Assembly: GCF_000143415.4 (NCBI RefSeq)
Contig: NW_003314653.1
Location: forward strand, 1 to 7,900
Direction: 5' to 3'
Source: Selaginella moellendorffii
Taxonomy: Eukaryota; Plantae; Lycopodiophyta
Length of the DNA: 7,900 bases
The position numbers and the translations under genes were made by a program. Under the pieces are notes generated by a model. It had not been told where the DNA came from. It saw nothing but the letters and a program-made list of their open reading frames with translations, and searched no databases. Shown here piece after piece: positions 1 through 7,900 of this stretch; positions within the stretch are counted from its first letter, which is position 1; every line of letters starts with the position of its first letter.

Positions 1-560
1 GTTTCGCGTGGGACTGGCGCCGTTGGGTTCGTGTTCGTGGGGGGCACCCTCCCCAGTGACAGGAGGTGCAAGGACCTCTCGGGGTTTGCCCCTTTCGCCC
101 AGCGGTCGCAAGGGTGTGCCGTTTTCGACAAGGCACGCACGGTGCCAGCATGGCATGGGGGGCCCAGCCAATTCGGATCGATGCCCTCGACGCGGGCTTC
201 GCCACGGCGCTCCTGGGGTCGCGTTCCAGTGCAGGCCCGAGCGCCAGTGCGGTGTTTTCCTCGAGAGTGAGATGCACTCCCGGCGGCAGCCCACGCATGG
301 GGCCCGCGATCCGTTGGCACGGCCGCGACCGGGGCGTCACGCCGGCCGGCCCCGTTGGTGCCGGAGTGCGGGCGGGCACACGGATCGCCACGTGGGACGC
401 ATCTTCTTCCGTGGGAAAAACCACAAAAGCAGGCGCCCAGGACATGGAAAAATGTACTTGGCCACATGGGCCAGTTGCGCGCACCGCCCCAGTTGCTCCC
501 ATGTGCCCAAGGGCGAAAGGGGGCCCACGGTCCACGAGATATGGCAACGGGAACAGCACA

Positions 561-854
561 AAACCCATTGCAATGGTGTGGGACGGTGGAGCAACGAAAT
601 CGGGATCCGTTTCTGTGGAAACGGGTGGACTCACGCAAGCTTTCCAACGGTTCAAGTCCCACCGCAAACCGAGCCATGGATGTTGCCCACTCGCTCGAAA
701 ACCCAGCGTCAAACCCATCGCAATGGTGCGGGCCGGTGGAGCGACGAAATCCAGATCCGTTTCTGTGGAAACGGGTGGACTCACGCAAGCTTTCCAACGG
801 TTCAAGTCCCACCGCAAACCGAGCCATGGATCTTGCCCACTCGCGCAAAACCCA
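561..854. repeat. Internal direct subrepeat pair, 150-bp period (561-710 and 711-~854), unit 1
   Basis: AAACCCATYGCAATGGTG... at 561 and 711. I count 7 mismatches over the first 134 nt; 604-681 and 754-831 are identical. Confidence 0.97.
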
Positions 855-1031
855 TATCCAGACCCTAGCCCTAGCCACGTGTCACGGGGACCGCCGGTCA
901 AACTCATCGCCGCCGGTCAACCACCCCACCGCACCGACGGCCGCGATTGCCCCAACTTAAGCCCCACTTAATCGCACTAAGCGCTCCCCATAATCGCCCT
1001 TTGCTAGTTAAACCCCCTCCCCCACAAACCC

Positions 1032-1042
1032 AATAAATTTAA
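1032..1042 (+). promoter_or_regulatory. TATA-like element (in every unit; offsets +1247, +2496, +3841, +5090, +6339)
   Basis: AATAAATTTAA, an 11-nt pure A/T run in a GC-rich unit, 30 to 20 nt upstream of the putative +1 G at 1062, where TFIIIB/TBP binds in Pol III genes. Confidence 0.55.
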
Positions 1043-1074
1043 CCGACACGAAATATGTAACGGAGAGGTGGTAG

Positions 1075-1085
1075 AGGCCTAGTGG
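1075..1085 (+). promoter_or_regulatory. Internal A-box-like element (in every unit)
   Basis: AGGCCTAGTGG versus consensus TRGCNNARYGG, at +14 from the putative start. Confidence 0.5.
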
Positions 1086-1129
1086 CAGAGACCCCCAATC
1101 TAAAAACAAGTCCACTCAAATAGGTCCCT

Positions 1130-1140
1130 GGGTCGAGACC
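1130..1140 (+). promoter_or_regulatory. Internal B-box-like element (in every unit)
   Basis: GGGTCGAGACC versus GGTTCGANNCC, 44 nt after the A box. G replaces the normally conserved T54-equivalent. Confidence 0.55.
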
Positions 1141-1156
1141 CACCCGGAGCCACCTC

Positions 1157-1161
1157 TTTTT
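1157..1161 (+). terminator. Oligo-T Pol III terminator-like signal (in every unit)
   Basis: TTTTT directly at the 3' arm of the terminal stem. It is the only T5 I find on the + strand of the unit, and there is no T4 within 1062-1156. Confidence 0.6.
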
Positions 1162-1809
1162 GGCACAATTTAAGTAGTGGAGGGAATATTCTCTCGGAAT
1201 AATGGAGAATGCGGGCGTTGGGGGCCGTTTTCTCGCGAACCGTGCGTGCGTTTCGCGTGGGACTGGCGCCGTTGGGTTCGTGTTCGTGGGGGGCACCCTC
1301 CCCAGTGACAGGAGGTGCAAGGACCTCTCGGGGTTTGCCCCTTTCGCCCAGCGGTCGCAAGGGTGTGCCGTTTTCGACAAGGCACGCACGGTGCCAGCAT
1401 GGCATGGGGGGCCCAGCCAATTCGGATCGATGCCCTCGACGCGGGCTTCGCCACGGCGCTCCTGGGGTCGCGTTCCAGTGCAGGCCCGAGCGCCAGTGCG
1501 GTGTTTTCCTCGAGAGTGAGATGCACTCCCGGCGGCAGCCCACGCATGGGGCCCGCGATCCGTTGGCACGGCCGCGACCGGGGCGTCACGCCGGCCGGCC
1601 CCGTTGGTGCCGGAGTGCGGGCGGGCACACGGATCGCCACGTGGGACGCATCTTCTTCCGTGGGAAAAACCACAAAAGCAGGCGCCCAGGACATGGAAAA
1701 ATGTACTTGGCCACATGGGCCAGTTGCGCGCACCGCCCCAGTTGCTCCCATGTGCCCAAGGGCGAAAGGGGGCCCACGGTCCACGAGATATGGCAACGGG
1801 AACAGCACA

Positions 1810-2101
1810 AAACCCATTGCAATGGTGTGGGACGGTGGAGCAACGAAATCGGGATCCGTTTCTGTGGAAACGGGTGGACTCACGCAAGCTTTCCAACGGT
1901 TCAAGTCCCACCGCAAACCGAGCCATGGATGTTGCCCACTCGCTCGAAAACCCAGCGTCAAACCCATCGCAATGGTGCGGGCCGGTGGAGCGACGAAATC
2001 CAGATCCGTTTCTGTGGAACGGGTGGACTCACGCAAGCTTTCCACGGTTCAAGTCCCACCGCAAACCGAGCCATGGATCTTGCCCACTCGCGCAAAACCC
2101 A
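1810..2101. repeat. 150-bp subrepeat pair, unit 2
   Basis: As unit 1, with two single-A deletions in the second subrepeat (about 2019 and 2044). Confidence 0.95.
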
Positions 2102-2308
2102 TATCCAGACCCTAGCCCTAGCCACGTGTCACGGGGACCGCCGGTCAAACTCATCGCCGCCGGTCAACCACCCCACCGCACCGACGGCCGCGATTGCCCC
2201 AACTTAAGCCCCACTTAATCGCACTAAGCGCTCCCCATAATCGCCCTTTGCTAGTTAAACCCCCTCCCCCACAAACCCAATAAATTTAACCGACACGAAA
2301 TATGTAAC

Positions 2309-2408
2309 GGAGAGGTGGTAGAGGCCTAGTGGCAGAGACCCCCAATCTAAAAACAAGTCCACTCAAATAGGTCCCTGGGTCGAGACCCACCCGGAGCCAC
2401 CTCTTTTT
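2309..2408 (+). ncRNA. Putative Pol III small RNA gene, copy 2
   Basis: Identical by eye to 1062-1161. Confidence 0.65.
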
Positions 2409-3056
2409 GGCACAATTTAAGTAGTGGAGGGAATATTCTCTCGGAATAATGGAGAATGCGGGCGTTGGGGGCCGTTTTCTCGCGAACCGTGCGTGCGTTT
2501 CGCGTGGGACTGGCGCCGTTGGGTTCGTGTTCGTGGGGGGCACCCTCCCCAGTGACAGGAGGTGCAAGGACCTCTCGGGGTTTGCCCCTTTCGCCCAGCG
2601 GTCGCAAGGGTGTGCCGTTTTCGACAAGGCACGCACGGTGCCAGCATGGCATGGGGGGCCCAGCCAATTCGGATCGATGCCCTCGACGCGGGCTTCGCCA
2701 CGGCGCTCCTGGGGTCGCGTTCCAGTGCAGGCCCGAGCGCCAGTGCGGTGTTTTCCTCGAGAGTGAGATGCACTCCCGGCGGCAGCCCACGCATGGGGCC
2801 CGCGATCCGTTGGCACGGCCGCGACCGGGGCGTCACGCCGGCCGGCCCCGTTGGTGCCGGAGTGCGGGCGGGCACACGGATCGCCACGTGGGACGCATCT
2901 TCTTCCGTGGGAAAAACCACAAAAGCAGGCGCCCAGGACATGGAAAAATGTACTTGGCCACATGGGCCAGTTGCGCGCACCGCCCCAGTTGCTCCCATGT
3001 GCCCAAGGGCGAAAGGGGGCCCACGGTCCACGAGATATGGCAACGGGAACAGCACA

Positions 3057-3350
3057 AAACCCATTGCAATGGTGTGGGACGGTGGAGCAACGAAATCGGG
3101 ATCCGTTTCTGTGGAAACGGGTGGACTCACGCAAGCTTTCCAACGGTTCAAGTCCCACCGCAAACCGAGCCATGGATGTTGCCCACTCGCTCGAAAACCC
3201 AGCGTCAAACCCATCGCAATGGTGCGGGCCGGTGGAGCGACGAAATCCAGATCCGTTTCTGTGGAAACGGGTGGACTCACGCAAGCTTTCCAACGGTTCA
3301 AGTCCCACCGCAAACCGAGCCATGGATCTTGCCCACTTGCGCAAAACCCA
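3057..3350. repeat. 150-bp subrepeat pair, unit 3
   Basis: As unit 1, with C>T at 3338. Confidence 0.95.
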
Positions 3351-3557
3351 TATCCAGACCCTAGCCCTAGCCACGTGTCACGGGGACCGCCGGTCAAACT
3401 CATCGCCGCCGGTCAACCACCCCACCGCACCGACGGCCGCGATTGCCCCAACTTAAGCCCCACTTAATCGCACTAAGCGCTCCCCATAATCGCCCTTTGC
3501 TAGTTAAACCCCCTCCCCCACAAACCCAATAAATTTAACCGACACGAAATATGTAAC

Positions 3558-3657
3558 GGAGAGGTGGTAGAGGCCTAGTGGCAGAGACCCCCAATCTAAA
3601 AACAAGTCCACTCAAATAGGGCCCTGGGACGAGAACCACCCGGAACCACCTCTTTTT
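3558..3657 (+). ncRNA. Putative Pol III small RNA gene, copy 3 (4 substitutions, adjacent to gap)
   Basis: Same as copy 1 except T>G 3621, T>A 3629, C>A 3635 and G>A 3645; two of these fall in the B box. All lie within 45 nt of the N gap. Confidence 0.5.
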
Positions 3658-3663
3658 GGCACA

Positions 3664-3763
3664 NNNNNNNNNNNNNNNNNNNNNNNNNNNNNNNNNNNNN
3701 NNNNNNNNNNNNNNNNNNNNNNNNNNNNNNNNNNNNNNNNNNNNNNNNNNNNNNNNNNNNNNN
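3664..3763. other. Assembly gap (100 N placeholder)
   Basis: Exactly 100 Ns. The flanks (...TTTTTGGCACA / TAGTAGTGGAGG...) are in repeat phase, about 4 nt apart in the unit. Confidence 0.99.
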
Positions 3764-4401
3764 TAGTAGTGGAGGGAATATTCTCTCGGAATAATGGAGA
3801 ATGCGGGCGTTGGGGGCCGTTTTCTCGCGAACCGTGCGTGCGTTTCGCGTGGGACTGGCGCCGTTGGGTTCGTGTTCGTGGGGGGCACCCTCCCCAGTGA
3901 CAGGAGGTGCAAGGACCTCTCGGGGTTTGCCCCTTTCGCCCAGCGGTCGCAAGGGTGTGCCGTTTTCGACAAGGCACGCACGGTGCCAGCATGGCATGGG
4001 GGGCCCAGCCAATTCGGATCGATGCCCTCGACGCGGGCTTCGCCACGGCGCTCCTGGGGTCGCGTTCCAGTGCAGGCCCGAGCGCCAGTGCGGTGTTTTC
4101 CTCGAGAGTGAGATGCACTCCCGGCGGCAGCCCACGCATGGGGCCCGCGATCCGTTGGCACGGCCGCGACCGGGGCGTCACGCCGGCCGGCCCCGTTGGT
4201 GCCGGAGTGCGGGCGGGCACACGGATCGCCACGTGGGACGCATCTTCTTCCGTGGGAAAAACCACAAAAGCAGGCGCCCAGGACATGGAAAAATGTACTT
4301 GGCCACATGGGCCAGTTGCGCGCACCGCCCCAGTTGCTCCCATGTGCCCAAGGGCGAAAGGGGGCCCACGGTCCACGAGATATGGCAACGGGAACAGCAC
4401 A

Positions 4402-4695
4402 AAACCCATTGCAATGGTGTGGGACGGTGGAGCAACGAAATCGGGATCCGTTTCTGTGGAAACGGGTGGACTCACGCAAGCTTTCCAACGGTTCAAGTCC
4501 CACCGCAAACCGAGCCATGGATGTTGCCCACTCGCTCGAAAACCCAGCGTCAAACCCATCGCAATGGTGCGGGCCGGTGGAGCGACGAAATCCAGATCCG
4601 TTTCTGTGGAAACGGGTGGACTCACGCAAGCTTTCCAACGGTTCAAGTCCCACCGCAAACCGAGCCATGGATCTTGCCCACTCGCGCAAAACCCA
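4402..4695. repeat. 150-bp subrepeat pair, unit 4
   Basis: As unit 1. Confidence 0.95.
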
Positions 4696-4902
4696 TATCC
4701 AGACCCTAGCCCTAGCCACGTGTCACGGGGACCGCCGGTCAAACTCATCGCCGCCGGTCAACCACCCCACCGCACCGACGGCCGCGATTGCCCCAACTTA
4801 AGCCCCACTTAATCGCACTAAGCGCTCCCCATAATCGCCCTTTGCTAGTTAAACCCCCTCCCCCACAAACCCAATAAATTTAACCGACACGAAATATGTA
4901 AC

Positions 4903-5002
4903 GGAGAGGTGGTAGAGGCCTAGTGGCAGAGACCCCCAATCTAAAAACAAGTCCACTCAAATAGGTCCCTGGGTCGAGACCCACCCGGAGCCACCTCTTT
5001 TT
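4903..5002 (+). ncRNA. Putative Pol III small RNA gene, copy 4
   Basis: Identical by eye to 1062-1161. Confidence 0.65.
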
Positions 5003-5650
5003 GGCACAATTTAAGTAGTGGAGGGAATATTCTCTCGGAATAATGGAGAATGCGGGCGTTGGGGGCCGTTTTCTCGCGAACCGTGCGTGCGTTTCGCGTG
5101 GGACTGGCGCCGTTGGGTTCGTGTTCGTGGGGGGCACCCTCCCCAGTGACAGGAGGTGCAAGGACCTCTCGGGGTTTGCCCCTTTCGCCCAGCGGTCGCA
5201 AGGGTGTGCCGTTTTCGACAAGGCACGCACGGTGCCAGCATGGCATGGGGGGCCCAGCCAATTCGGATCGATGCCCTCGACGCGGGCTTCGCCACGGCGC
5301 TCCTGGGGTCGCGTTCCAGTGCAGGCCCGAGCGCCAGTGCGGTGTTTTCCTCGAGAGTGAGATGCACTCCCGGCGGCAGCCCACGCATGGGGCCCGCGAT
5401 CCGTTGGCACGGCCGCGACCGGGGCGTCACGCCGGCCGGCCCCGTTGGTGCCGGAGTGCGGGCGGGCACACGGATCGCCACGTGGGACGCATCTTCTTCC
5501 GTGGGAAAAACCACAAAAGCAGGCACCCAGGACATGGAAAAATGTACTTGGCCACATGGGCCAGTTGCGCGCACCGCCCCAGTTGCTCCCATGTGCCCAA
5601 GGGCGAAAGGGGGCCCACGGTCCACGAGATATGGCAACGGGAACAGCACA

Positions 5651-5944
5651 AAACCCATTGCAATGGTGTGGGACGGTGGAGCAACGAAATCGGGATCCGT
5701 TTCTGTGGAAACGGGTGGACTCACGCAAGCTTTCCAACGGTTCAAGTCCCACCGCAAACCGAGCCATGGATGTTGCCCACTCGCTCGAAAACCCAGCGTC
5801 AAACCCATCGCAATGGTGCGGGCCGGTGGAGCGACGAAATCCAGATCCGTTTCTGTGGAAACGGGTGGACTCACGCAAGCTTTCCAACGGTTCAAGTCCC
5901 ACCGCAAACCGAGCCATGGATCTTGCCCACTCGCGCAAAACCCA
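5651..5944. repeat. 150-bp subrepeat pair, unit 5
   Basis: As unit 1. Confidence 0.95.
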
Positions 5945-6151
5945 TATCCAGACCCTAGCCCTAGCCACGTGTCACGGGGACCGCCGGTCAAACTCATCGC
6001 CGCCGGTCAACCACCCCACCGCACCGACGGCCGCGATTGCCCCAACTTAAGCCCCACTTAATCGCACTAAGCGCTCCCCATAATCGCCCTTTGCTAGTTA
6101 AACCCCCTCCCCCACAAACCCAATAAATTTAACCGACACGAAATATGTAAC

Positions 6152-6251
6152 GGAGAGGTGGTAGAGGCCTAGTGGCAGAGACCCCCAATCTAAAAACAAG
6201 TCCACTCAAATAGGTCCCTGGGTCGAGACCCACCCGGAGCCACCTCTTTTT
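6152..6251 (+). ncRNA. Putative Pol III small RNA gene, copy 5
   Basis: Identical by eye to 1062-1161. Confidence 0.65.
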
Positions 6252-6899
6252 GGCACAATTTAAGTAGTGGAGGGAATATTCTCTCGGAATAATGGAGAAT
6301 GCGGGCGTTGGGGGCCGTTTTCTCGCGAACCGTGCGTGCGTTTCGCGTGGGACTGGCGCCGTTGGGTTCGTGTTCGTGGGGGGCACCCTCCCCAGTGACA
6401 GGAGGTGCAAGGACCTCTCGGGGTTTGCCCCTTTCGCCCAGCGGTCGCAAGGGTGTGCCGTTTTCGACAAGGCACGCACGGTGCCAGCATGGCATGGGGG
6501 GCCCAGCCAATTCGGATCGATGCCCTCGACGCGGGCTTCGCCACGGCGCTCCTGGGGTCGCGTTCCAGTGCAGGCCCGAGCGCCAGTGCGGTGTTTTCCT
6601 CGAGAGTGAGATGCACTCCCGGCGGCAGCCCACGCATGGGGCCCGCGATCCGTTGGCACGGCCGCGACCGGGGCGTCACGCCGGCCGGCCCCGTTGGTGC
6701 CGGAGTGCGGGCGGGCACACGGATCGCCACGTGGGACGCATCTTCTTCCGTGGGAAAAACCACAAAAGCAGGCGCCCAGGACATGGAAAAATGTACTTGG
6801 CCACATGGGCCAGTTGCGCGCACCGCCCCAGTTGCTCCCATGTGCCCAAGGGCGAAAGGGGGCCCACGGTCCACGAGATATGGCAACGGGAACAGCACA

Positions 6900-7193
6900 A
6901 AACCCATTGCAATGGTGTGGGACGGTGGAGCAACGAAATCGGGATCCGTTTCTGTGGAAACGGGTGGACTCACGCAAGCTTTCCAACGGTTCAAGTCCCA
7001 CCGCAAACCGAGCCATGGATGTTGCCCACTCGCTCGAAAACCCAGCGTCAAACCCATCGCAATGGTGCGGGCCGGTGGAGCGACGAAATCCAGATCCGTT
7101 TCTGTGGAAACGGGTGGACTCACGCAAGCTTTCCAACGGTTCAAGTCCCACCGCAAACCGAGCCATGGATCTTGCCCACTCGCGCAAAACCCA
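6900..7193. repeat. 150-bp subrepeat pair, unit 6
   Basis: As unit 1. Confidence 0.95.
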
Positions 7194-7400
7194 TATCCAG
7201 ACCCTAGCCCTAGCCACGTGTCACGGGGACCGCCGGTCAAACTCATCGCCGCCGGTCAACCACCCCACCGCACCGACGGCCGCGATTGCCCCAACTTAAG
7301 CCCCACTTAATCGCACTAAGCGCTCCCCATAATCGCCCTTTGCTAGTTAAACCCCCTCCCCCACAAACCCAATAAATTTAACCGACACGAAATATGTAAC

Positions 7401-7500
7401 GGAGAGGTGGTAGAGGCCTAGTGGCAGAGACCCCCAATCTAAAAACAAGTCCACTCAAATAGGTCCCTGGGTCGAGACCCACCCGGAGCCACCTCTTTTT
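7401..7500 (+). ncRNA. Putative Pol III small RNA gene, copy 6
   Basis: Identical by eye to 1062-1161. Confidence 0.65.
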
Positions 7501-7900
7501 GGCACAATTTAAGTAGTGGAGGGAATATTCTCTCGGAATAATGGAGAATGCGGGCGTTGGGGGCCGTTTTCTCGCGAACCGTGCGTGCGTTTCGCGTGGG
7601 ACTGGCGCCGTTGGGTTCGTGTTCGTGGGGGGCACCCTCCCCAGTGACAGGAGGTGCAAGGACCTCTCGGGGTTTGCCCCTTTCGCCCAGCGGTCGCAAG
7701 GGTGTGCCGTTTTCGACAAGGCACGCACGGTGCCAGCATGGCATGGGGGGCCCAGCCAATTCGGATCGATGCCCTCGACGCGGGCTTCGCCACGGCGCTC
7801 CTGGGGTCGCGTTCCAGTGCAGGCCCGAGCGCCAGTGCGGTGTTTTCCTCGAGAGTGAGATGCACCCAACCGACAAGTAGTCAGGGTTTGCCCCCGAAGC

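What the first reader, a model, noticed from the sequence alone, without database searches (positions are those of the whole stretch)
1032..1161. Unidentified ~100-nt Pol III-type small RNA gene, one per repeat unit, with vault-RNA-like layout
Seen: five signals in the correct order and spacing within 130 bp, namely TATA-like AATAAATTTAA (-30 to -20), A-box-like (+14), B-box-like (44 nt later), an 8-bp perfect terminal stem (1064-1071/1150-1157) and the unit's only + strand T5. Established: type-2 Pol III RNAs of about 90-170 nt that have paired ends and are not tRNAs include vault RNAs, adenoviral VA RNAs and EBV EBERs. As I recall, the mammalian vault RNA B box reads GTTCGAGACCC and lies shortly before the T-run; here it is GGTCGAGACCC, 15 nt before the T-run. 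Inference: this is a divergent vault RNA or an undescribed Pol III ncRNA family. Both boxes have one mismatch, so activity is not guaranteed.
Basis: partly seen in the sequence, partly recalled or inferred. Interest (0 to 1): 0.85.

Follow-up and report, generated by a model that had tools for sequence, protein, structure and literature searches.

The report
Orphan tRNA-derived Pol III cassette array
Each 1.25-kb unit of a spikemoss tandem repeat carries one complete, tRNA-gene-style set of RNA polymerase III signals for a roughly 96-100-base RNA that matches no known RNA family and is not a vault RNA, but no transcript has been seen.

Summary
They are an 11-nt A/T block (1032-1042), an A box (1075-1085, 10 of 11), a B box (1130-1140, 10 of 11), an 8-bp closing stem (1064-1071/1150-1157) and the unit's only plus-strand T5 (1157-1161). 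A box, B box and T-run together arise in 14 of 20,000 shuffles of the unit. The stem arises in about 1% of shuffles of its flanks.

The vault reading is not supported. Rfam gives no Vault, tRNA, Y, VA or EBER match even at E≤10 on 136 nt. ARAGORN finds no tRNA. Published work says plants have probably lost the major vault protein.

The layout is that of a plant tRNA gene whose cloverleaf has been lost and replaced by a long closing stem, so I call it a tRNA-derived type-2 Pol III cassette.

Expression is unproven. No read out of 9.2 million records of one RNA-seq run lay on the unit. I could run no positive control, and that kind of library would miss a 100-nt RNA.

I found no homologue outside this genome, so conservation could not be tested.

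The scan has already reported this same repeat on other pieces of this genome (Selaginella moellendorffii, by its notes), with the same conclusion.

The parts
1..7865 (+). Tandem array of a 1249-bp unit: six full units starting at 1, 1250, 2497, 3842, 5091 and 6340, plus a partial seventh. It is interrupted by a 99-N assembly gap (3665-3763) and ends at 7865/7866.
   Evidence: spacing 1249, 1247, 1345, 1249, 1249, 1249; 99-100% identity; only 8 variable sites plus one indel at the gap among six units.
1032..1042 (+). A/T-only block AATAAATTTAA, TATA-like, 20-30 nt upstream of the predicted start. It sits where plant tRNA genes carry a TATA-like element.
   Evidence: It is the longest A/T-only run in the unit, with 0.15 runs of 9 or more expected per shuffled unit. 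Function is inferred.
1062..1161 (+). Predicted Pol III transcript of about 96-100 nt, from G1062 or A1064 to the U-run. It folds as a three-way junction closed by a 10-bp stem (8 Watson-Crick pairs plus 2 G-U pairs that use the first T residues of the terminator).
   Evidence: Fold. No Rfam family at gathering score or at E<=10. No tRNA by ARAGORN. The start and end are inferred, not observed.
1064..1071 (+). 5' strand of the closing stem (AGAGGTGG).
   Evidence: Perfect complement of 1150-1157; 223 of 20,000 flank shuffles reach 8 bp; pair probabilities about 1.0.
1075..1085 (+). A-box-like AGGCCTAGTGG (10 of 11 to TRGCNNAGTGG).
   Evidence: the only A-box match at 1 mismatch or fewer in the unit, on either strand.
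1130..1140 (+). B-box-like GGGTCGAGACC (10 of 11 to GGTTCGANNCC). Read another way, it is a T-arm remnant TGGG/CCCA with a 6-nt loop that lacks one T.
   Evidence: hand threading on the sequence.
1150..1157 (+). 3' strand of the closing stem (CCACCTCT).
1157..1161 (+). T5 run, the predicted Pol III terminator and the only plus-strand T5 in the unit.
2279..2408 (+). Cassette copy in unit 2, identical to 1032-1161.
3528..3657 (+). Cassette copy in unit 3. It has four substitutions at unit positions 1125, 1133, 1139 and 1149, in and around box B, just before the N gap. These are probably low-quality contig-end sequence.
4873..5002 (+). Cassette copy in unit 4, identical.
6122..6251 (+). Cassette copy in unit 5, identical.
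7371..7500 (+). Cassette copy in unit 6, identical.

Best explanation
The cassette is a restructured, tRNA-derived type-2 RNA polymerase III transcription unit. It was fixed once per unit in a homogenised 1249-bp tandem repeat.

Inferred mechanism: TFIIIC binds the B box (1130-1140) and A box (1075-1085). It places TFIIIB over the A/T block at 1032-1042. Pol III starts near 1062-1064 and stops in the T5 at 1157-1161. The product would be a 96-100-nt RNA with a 3' U-tail, whose ends pair in an 8-10-bp stem that closes a three-way junction.

It is no longer a tRNA, because the acceptor, D and anticodon stems in the tRNA register are lost. It belongs to no described RNA family.

What is shown: the signals, their order and spacing, their improbability by chance, their presence in every unit, and the absence of any family match.

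What is inferred: that the unit is actually transcribed, and that the RNA is stable or useful.
For: - Signals and spacing were confirmed in the sequence.
- A box, B box and T-run together occur in 14 of 20,000 shuffles.
- The closing stem occurs in 1.1% of flank shuffles and has pair probability of about 1.
- The longest A/T run of the unit sits at -30 to -20.
- Anchoring tRNA position 8 at 1075 and position 52 at 1130 puts the tRNA-equivalent 3' end at 1151, so the T-run starts 5 nt later, as in tRNA genes. The start-to-start A-B distance of 55 fits a tRNA with a long variable arm or an intron (hand threading).
- The boxes keep 10 of 11 positions each, while the cloverleaf stems in that register keep only 2 Watson-Crick and 2 G-U of 7 pairs (acceptor) and 1-2 of 4 pairs (D stem). 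That pattern is what selection on promoter function, rather than tRNA function, would leave. This is an inference.
- The cassette lies in the least G+C-rich part of the unit (47-53% against 57-80%), like a tRNA gene with its flanks.
- The unit has no coding signal.
- Earlier scan notes on other pieces of this genome reached the same description. They are not independent evidence.
Against: - No transcript: 0 of 9.2 million RNA-seq records lay on the unit. This is a weak negative, because there was no positive control and the library type would miss a 100-nt RNA.
- The fold is not significantly more stable than shuffles (z = -1.62).
- The copies are almost identical, so there is no sign of selection in the cassette relative to the spacer.
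- No homologue turned up in the metagenome or prokaryote collections. Plant genomes could not be searched.
- Each box has a mismatch.
- Long tandem arrays are often silenced.
Confidence: 0.45

Rival explanations
1. Inert relic. A tRNA gene, or a tRNA-derived mobile element, was caught with its flanks in the founding unit of a satellite and copied passively with it. The Pol III signals survive only because the array was amplified and homogenised from one copy. The array is silent chromatin and makes no stable RNA.
For: - No RNA reads lay on the unit.
- The cloverleaf is destroyed.
- The units are near-identical, as in a young or homogenised satellite.
- The fold z-score is not significant.
- There is no evidence of conservation outside this genome.
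Against: - All five signals are intact together while the rest of the tRNA body is unrecognisable.
- A new, perfect closing stem uses the leader and trailer, which passive decay does not predict.
- The CpG observed/expected ratio of the unit is 0.96, so there is no long-term deamination decay. This point is weak.
Confidence: 0.37
2. TFIIIC landing array. The B boxes recruit TFIIIC, with little or no Pol III transcription, and the repeat acts in chromatin organisation, like ETC or chromosome-organising-clamp sites in yeasts.
For: There are four B-box matches (1 mismatch or fewer) on the plus strand of each unit, at 649, 799, 1130 and 1424, and none on the minus strand. Shuffles give a mean of 0.55 for both strands together. 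Two of the four are copies of one 150-bp subrepeat, so there are three independent sites.
Against: - The enrichment is modest once the duplicate is discounted.
- Such sites have not been established in plants, to my knowledge.
- This reading does not explain the A box, the T5, the TATA-like block or the closing stem.
Confidence: 0.08
3. Divergent vault RNA.
For: It has type-2 boxes, paired ends, a length of about 100 nt, and a B box ending in TCGAGACCC shortly before the T-run. The resemblance to the mammalian vault RNA B box is recalled from memory, not tested.
Against: - The Rfam Vault model gives no match even at E<=10 on 136 nt.
- The shared motif is the generic tRNA-type B box.
- The major vault protein is reported as probably lost in plants (PMC3762200).
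Confidence: 0.01
4. Chance resemblance in a repeat, with no Pol III ancestry.
For: Each box has a mismatch. No covariance model recognises the region.
Against: The joint probability of the boxes and T-run is about 7 in 10,000 per unit. On top of that come a stem seen in about 1% of shuffles and an A/T block at the right distance.
Confidence: 0.04

Closest known systems
Plant nuclear tRNA genes, including tandemly clustered ones such as the Arabidopsis Ser-Tyr-Tyr 1.5-kb array (established knowledge)
   Same: Internal A and B boxes at tRNA spacing, an upstream TATA-like A/T block, a T-run a few nucleotides after the body, and tandem repetition in kilobase units.
   Different: There is no cloverleaf. 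ARAGORN and the Rfam tRNA and tRNA-Sec models give nothing. No anticodon arm is present. The closing stem is 8-10 bp, is shifted outwards by 3-6 nt on each side, and includes terminator T residues.
Vault RNA (Rfam RF00006)
   Same: About 100 nt, type-2 internal promoter, paired 5' and 3' ends, B box close to the T-run.
   Different: There is no model match. The host lineage probably lacks MVP. The gene is arrayed in a 1.25-kb satellite rather than a small locus.
tRNA-derived Pol III elements: SINEs, and Helenus LTR elements such as Helenus-1_SMo of the same species (PMC10886601)
   Same: The tRNA-type A/B box region is kept while tRNA function is lost. By eye, the cassette shares the generic D-arm (GTAG..AGTGG.AGAG) and T-arm (AGGTCC.TGGGT.C.A..CCC) motifs with the Helenus-1_SMo LTR printed.
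   Different: The sequence is otherwise different. In this window there are no paired LTRs, no A-rich or LINE-derived tail and no target-site duplications, and the copies are strictly one per 1249-bp unit rather than dispersed.
5S rDNA-type homogenised small-RNA gene arrays
   Same: One Pol III-type gene per unit, a long spacer, and near-identical units.
   Different: There is no 5S or other known RNA, and expression is not shown.

Membership tests
Vault RNA | Sequence and structure match to the curated Vault covariance model (RF00006) | tested here: not met
   No match at gathering score, nor at E<=10 on 1300 nt or 136 nt.
Vault RNA | Host encodes the major vault protein and the RNA sits in vault particles | not testable with these tools
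   The plant genome could not be searched. PMC3762200 reports vaults as probably lost in plants.
Vault RNA | Pol III type-2 boxes, a T-run and paired ends | tested here: met
   These features are shared with many other Pol III RNAs, so they are not diagnostic.
tRNA | Cloverleaf with an anticodon arm, recognised by tRNA finders | tested here: not met
   ARAGORN finds none, with or without introns. Only nonsense calls appear at lowered thresholds, spread all over the unit. Rfam tRNA and tRNA-Sec give nothing at E<=10.
tRNA-derived type-2 Pol III unit (a descriptive class, not a curated family) | A box and B box at tRNA-like spacing, a downstream T-run, same strand | tested here: met
   A box at 1075, B box at 1130 (start-to-start 55), T5 at 1157; 14 of 20,000 shuffles.
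tRNA-derived type-2 Pol III unit (a descriptive class, not a curated family) | Transcription by Pol III | tested here: inconclusive
   0 reads of 9.2 million RNA-seq records. There was no positive control, and the library is unsuited to 100-nt RNAs.
Y RNA / adenoviral VA RNA / EBER | Match to the curated models | tested here: not met
Plant USE+TATA (type-3-like) small RNA genes (U6, U3, 7SL, MRP, telomerase RNA) | Upstream sequence element RTCCCACATCG 20-35 bp upstream of the TATA box on the gene strand | tested here: not met
   At 2 mismatches or fewer, the only matches are on the minus strand at 388-398 and 574-584. None lies upstream of 1032 on the plus strand.
Self-cleaving ribozyme satellites (hammerhead and others) | Match to the ribozyme models | tested here: not met
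Tandem (satellite-type) repeat | Head-to-tail units of constant length and high identity | tested here: met
   Contigs of two public runs close the unit on itself (joint 1748->500).

The most novel reading that the evidence does not exclude
The array encodes a lycophyte-specific, abundant Pol III non-coding RNA of a new family. It would be a tRNA descendant that swapped the cloverleaf for a long closing stem, as is proposed for several animal Pol III RNAs. It would be kept in many homogenised copies like 5S rDNA. By the scan's earlier notes (untested here), it is stable enough as a multicopy gene to have become the dedicated target of sequence-specific LINEs.
Probability: 0.2. Interest if true: 0.7.

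Novelty: new member of a known kind. Interest (0 to 1): 0.4.

Why it matters
If it is transcribed, this would be a new plant Pol III RNA family found from DNA grammar alone. Very few non-tRNA, non-5S type-2 Pol III RNAs are known in plants. It would also show a tRNA gene turning into another kind of RNA gene inside a homogenised array.

If it is silent, it is an ordinary satellite that happens to preserve a tRNA-gene relic. Its main use would then be as a marker, and perhaps as a landing site for mobile elements.

One size-selected small-RNA library or one Northern blot would separate the two outcomes.

Tried and rejected
1. Known RNA family: Rfam at gathering score on the whole window, then at E<=10 on 1300 nt and on 136 nt. 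Only weak, unrelated minus-strand hits appeared (a trypanosomatid H/ACA snoRNA at 16 bits, a miRNA).
2. tRNA, with or without an intron: ARAGORN at default settings, with introns and in mitochondrial mode finds none. At lowered thresholds it reports 23 scattered false calls.
3. I suspected by eye that the cassette is a third, diverged copy of the 150-bp subrepeat at 561-854. Local alignment scores are no better than shuffles (280 and 38 of 1000 shuffles reach them) and BLAST finds nothing. Rejected.
4. Coding unit: long ORFs exist in all frames, as expected at 61% G+C. There is no Pfam domain and no relative for two ORFs among 5.8 billion proteins. I had also hoped to use these ORFs as handles to fetch other copies of the repeat; that failed.
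5. Homologues elsewhere: a two-box pattern gave 0 hits in the metagenome and prokaryote genome collections. A 21-mer of the A-box region gave 0 in genomes. A 20-mer of the B-box region gave 9 metagenome hits, all chance matches inside G+C-rich bacterial sequence with no similarity beyond 20-29 nt.
6. Plant USE element: absent upstream of the cassette.
7. Transcripts: none laid.
8. Literature: no paper holds 12-15-nt words of the cassette, and none links Selaginella to sequence-specific non-LTR elements.
9. Structures of the subrepeats, the antisense strand and the spacer: not significant. The best is 711-860 on the minus strand, z = -2.1.

Full report
**What the window is**

The window holds six full units and part of a seventh of a head-to-tail repeat with a 1249-bp period. 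Start-to-start spacing is 1249, 1247, 1345, 1249, 1249 and 1249. The 1345 is caused by a 99-N assembly gap at 3665-3763. The units differ at only eight sites, plus one indel at the gap. Contigs of two small public runs close the unit on itself. The scan's own notes name the genome as Selaginella moellendorffii. I did not test that identity, and the run search coded the organism.

The unit is 61% G+C. Long ORFs occur in every frame, but they have no Pfam domain and no relatives, so the unit is non-coding. Each unit also holds an internal 150-bp duplication (561-854, 93% identical) and a 19-bp mini-repeat.

**Check of the observation**

- AATAAATTTAA at 1032-1042.
- AGGCCTAGTGG at 1075-1085, one mismatch to the A-box consensus TRGCNNAGTGG.
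- GGGTCGAGACC at 1130-1140, one mismatch to GGTTCGANNCC, 44 nt after the A box.
- AGAGGTGG at 1064-1071, pairing perfectly with CCACCTCT at 1150-1157.
- TTTTT at 1157-1161, the only plus-strand run of five T in the unit.

I tested these against chance:
- The combination of an A box (at most one mismatch), a B box (at most one mismatch) 30-70 nt later and a run of at least four T within 45 nt occurs once in the real unit. It occurs in 14 of 20,000 dinucleotide-preserving shuffles, both strands counted.
- A perfect stem of 8 bp or more between the segment before the A box and the segment before the T-run arises in 223 of 20,000 shuffles of those segments. In the partition function its pairs have probability of about 1 for several choices of ends.
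- The A/T block is the longest A/T-only run in the unit, where 0.15 runs of nine or more are expected per shuffled unit. The cassette does lie in the least G+C-rich part of the unit (47-53%), so this signal is not fully independent of the others.

Taken together, the layout is not a chance pattern. The cassette recurs at 2279-2408, 3528-3657, 4873-5002, 6122-6251 and 7371-7500.

**What it is not**

It matches no Rfam family at gathering score. At E≤10 on 1300 nt and then on 136 nt, where the filters are laxest, there is still no tRNA, tRNA-Sec, Vault, Y RNA, VA, EBER, snRNA, 7SL or ribozyme match. Only two weak minus-strand hits to unrelated families appear. ARAGORN finds no tRNA with default, intron or mitochondrial settings. 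Lowering its threshold gives 23 scattered calls on both strands, which is noise. The plant upstream sequence element of USE+TATA small-RNA genes is absent upstream of the cassette.

The vault reading therefore fails the one membership test I could run. It is also unlikely on host grounds, since vault particles are reported as probably lost in plants (PMC3762200). I could not search the Selaginella genome for MVP.

**What it looks like**

I set the A box at tRNA positions 8-18 and the B box at positions 52-62. The tRNA-equivalent body then runs from 1068 to 1151, and the T-run starts 5 nt later, as in tRNA genes. The A-to-B distance of 55 (start to start) is that of a tRNA with a long variable arm or an intron. 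An upstream TATA-like block about 30 nt before the start is a known feature of plant tRNA genes (established knowledge).

By eye, the D-arm and T-arm regions resemble those of ordinary tRNAs, including the tRNA-derived LTR of Helenus-1_SMo from the same species printed. Examples are GTAG..AGTGG.AGAG and AGGTCC.TGGGT.C.A..CCC. The T-arm survives as TGGG/CCCA with a 6-nt loop that lacks one T.

The rest of the cloverleaf is gone in that register. The acceptor stem has 2 Watson-Crick and 2 G-U pairs of 7, the D stem has 1-2 of 4, and no anticodon stem can be drawn. Instead, the leader and trailer form a new closing stem of 8 Watson-Crick pairs. G-U pairs onto the first T residues of the terminator extend it to 10.

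The predicted RNA is a three-way junction of about 96-100 nt. Its overall stability is unremarkable (z = -1.62).

**Most likely mechanism**

I commit to a Pol III-competent, tRNA-derived type-2 unit. TFIIIC would bind the B and A boxes, TFIIIB would sit over the A/T block, initiation would fall near 1062-1064 and termination in the T5.

The main argument for present or long-lasting promoter function is the contrast between what is kept and what is lost. Both boxes keep 10 of 11 positions, and the T5 and the A/T block are in place, while the tRNA-specific pairings are gone and a new closing stem has formed. This is an inference. The ancestor is unknown, and insertions rather than many substitutions may have broken the cloverleaf.

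I put this reading at 0.45. The passive-relic reading gets 0.37.

**Evidence on expression**

None is positive. One raw-read RNA-seq run of the same species label gave 0 laid reads among 9.2 million records, about 12% of the run, over the whole unit. The tool itself marks this as no test without a positive control, and I had only one call. A standard paired 150-nt cDNA library would also lose a 100-nt structured RNA. Two tiny runs of uncertain type hold the unit as contigs, which says nothing about transcription.

**Evidence on conservation**

None was obtainable. Five cassette copies are identical. The sixth has four substitutions within 25 nt directly before the assembly gap, which looks like poor contig-end sequence. 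Pattern scans of the metagenome and prokaryote collections gave nothing related. No plant genome collection is on hand. No paper in the library holds words of the cassette.

**Relation to earlier scan notes**

The scan has met this same 1249-bp repeat on other pieces of this genome. Two follow-ups described it as an orphan Pol III-type, tRNA-derived cassette with no transcript. One of these and a third follow-up reported sequence-specific L1/Tx1-type LINE insertions at one nucleotide in box B. My results agree with the first point.

The LINE insertions are not present in this window and I could not test them. Here the array ends at 7865/7866, at unit position about 276, which is not in box B. 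If the insertions are real, they show that the array is old and stable enough to be a target. Sequence-specific LINEs are also known to target plain repeats, so they would not prove gene status (established knowledge).

**Verdict**

The vault interpretation is not supported. The 'undescribed Pol III RNA gene' reading is consistent with the evidence but unproven. It is a new sequence family of a known kind, a tRNA-derived type-2 Pol III unit in a homogenised array. Interest is moderate until a transcript is shown.

Noticed in passing
window 561-854 (and the same place in every unit): There is an internal tandem duplication of a 150-bp subunit, 93% identical. Each copy carries GGTTCAAGTCC (649-659, 799-809), which fits the B-box/T-loop consensus except for A in place of G at position 6, and a perfect 7-bp hairpin CCGTTTC-tgtg-GAAACGG. 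It has no A box, no plus-strand T-run, no Rfam match and no significant fold.
   Followed up: partly
window 649, 799, 1130, 1424 (plus strand): There are four B-box-like sites (1 mismatch or fewer) per unit, all on the plus strand and none on the minus strand. Shuffles give a mean of 0.55 for both strands together. Two of the four are copies of one subrepeat. This is a possible multi-site TFIIIC target, but I did not test it.
   Followed up: partly
window 7866-7900: The array stops after ...GAGATGCAC (unit position about 276) and runs into unrelated sequence (CCAACCGACAAGTAGTCAGGG...). Only 35 nt are in the window, so I cannot tell whether this is the edge of the array or an insertion.
   Followed up: no
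window 3621-3773: The cassette copy next to the 99-N gap has four substitutions in 25 nt, two of them in box B, and the sequence after the gap resumes slightly out of register. This is probably low-quality contig ends, and the gap could hide more units or an insertion.
   Followed up: partly
window 863-876 and 890-932: There is a CCCTAG CCCTAG CC motif just upstream of a 19-bp mini-repeat (ACCGCCGGTCAAAC..., 2.3 copies). Its six-base period does not fit the seven-base plant telomere repeat. Meaning unknown.
   Followed up: no
window 1-1249: The CpG observed/expected ratio of the unit is 0.96, with 112 CpG. So there is no deamination decay, as might be expected in a long-methylated repeat. The cassette itself has few CpG (5; ratio 0.66).
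   Followed up: partly
window 711-860, minus strand: The antisense of the second subrepeat folds better than most shuffles (-60.8 kcal/mol, z = -2.1, 7 of 200 shuffles as good). The first subrepeat does not (z = 0.08).
   Followed up: no
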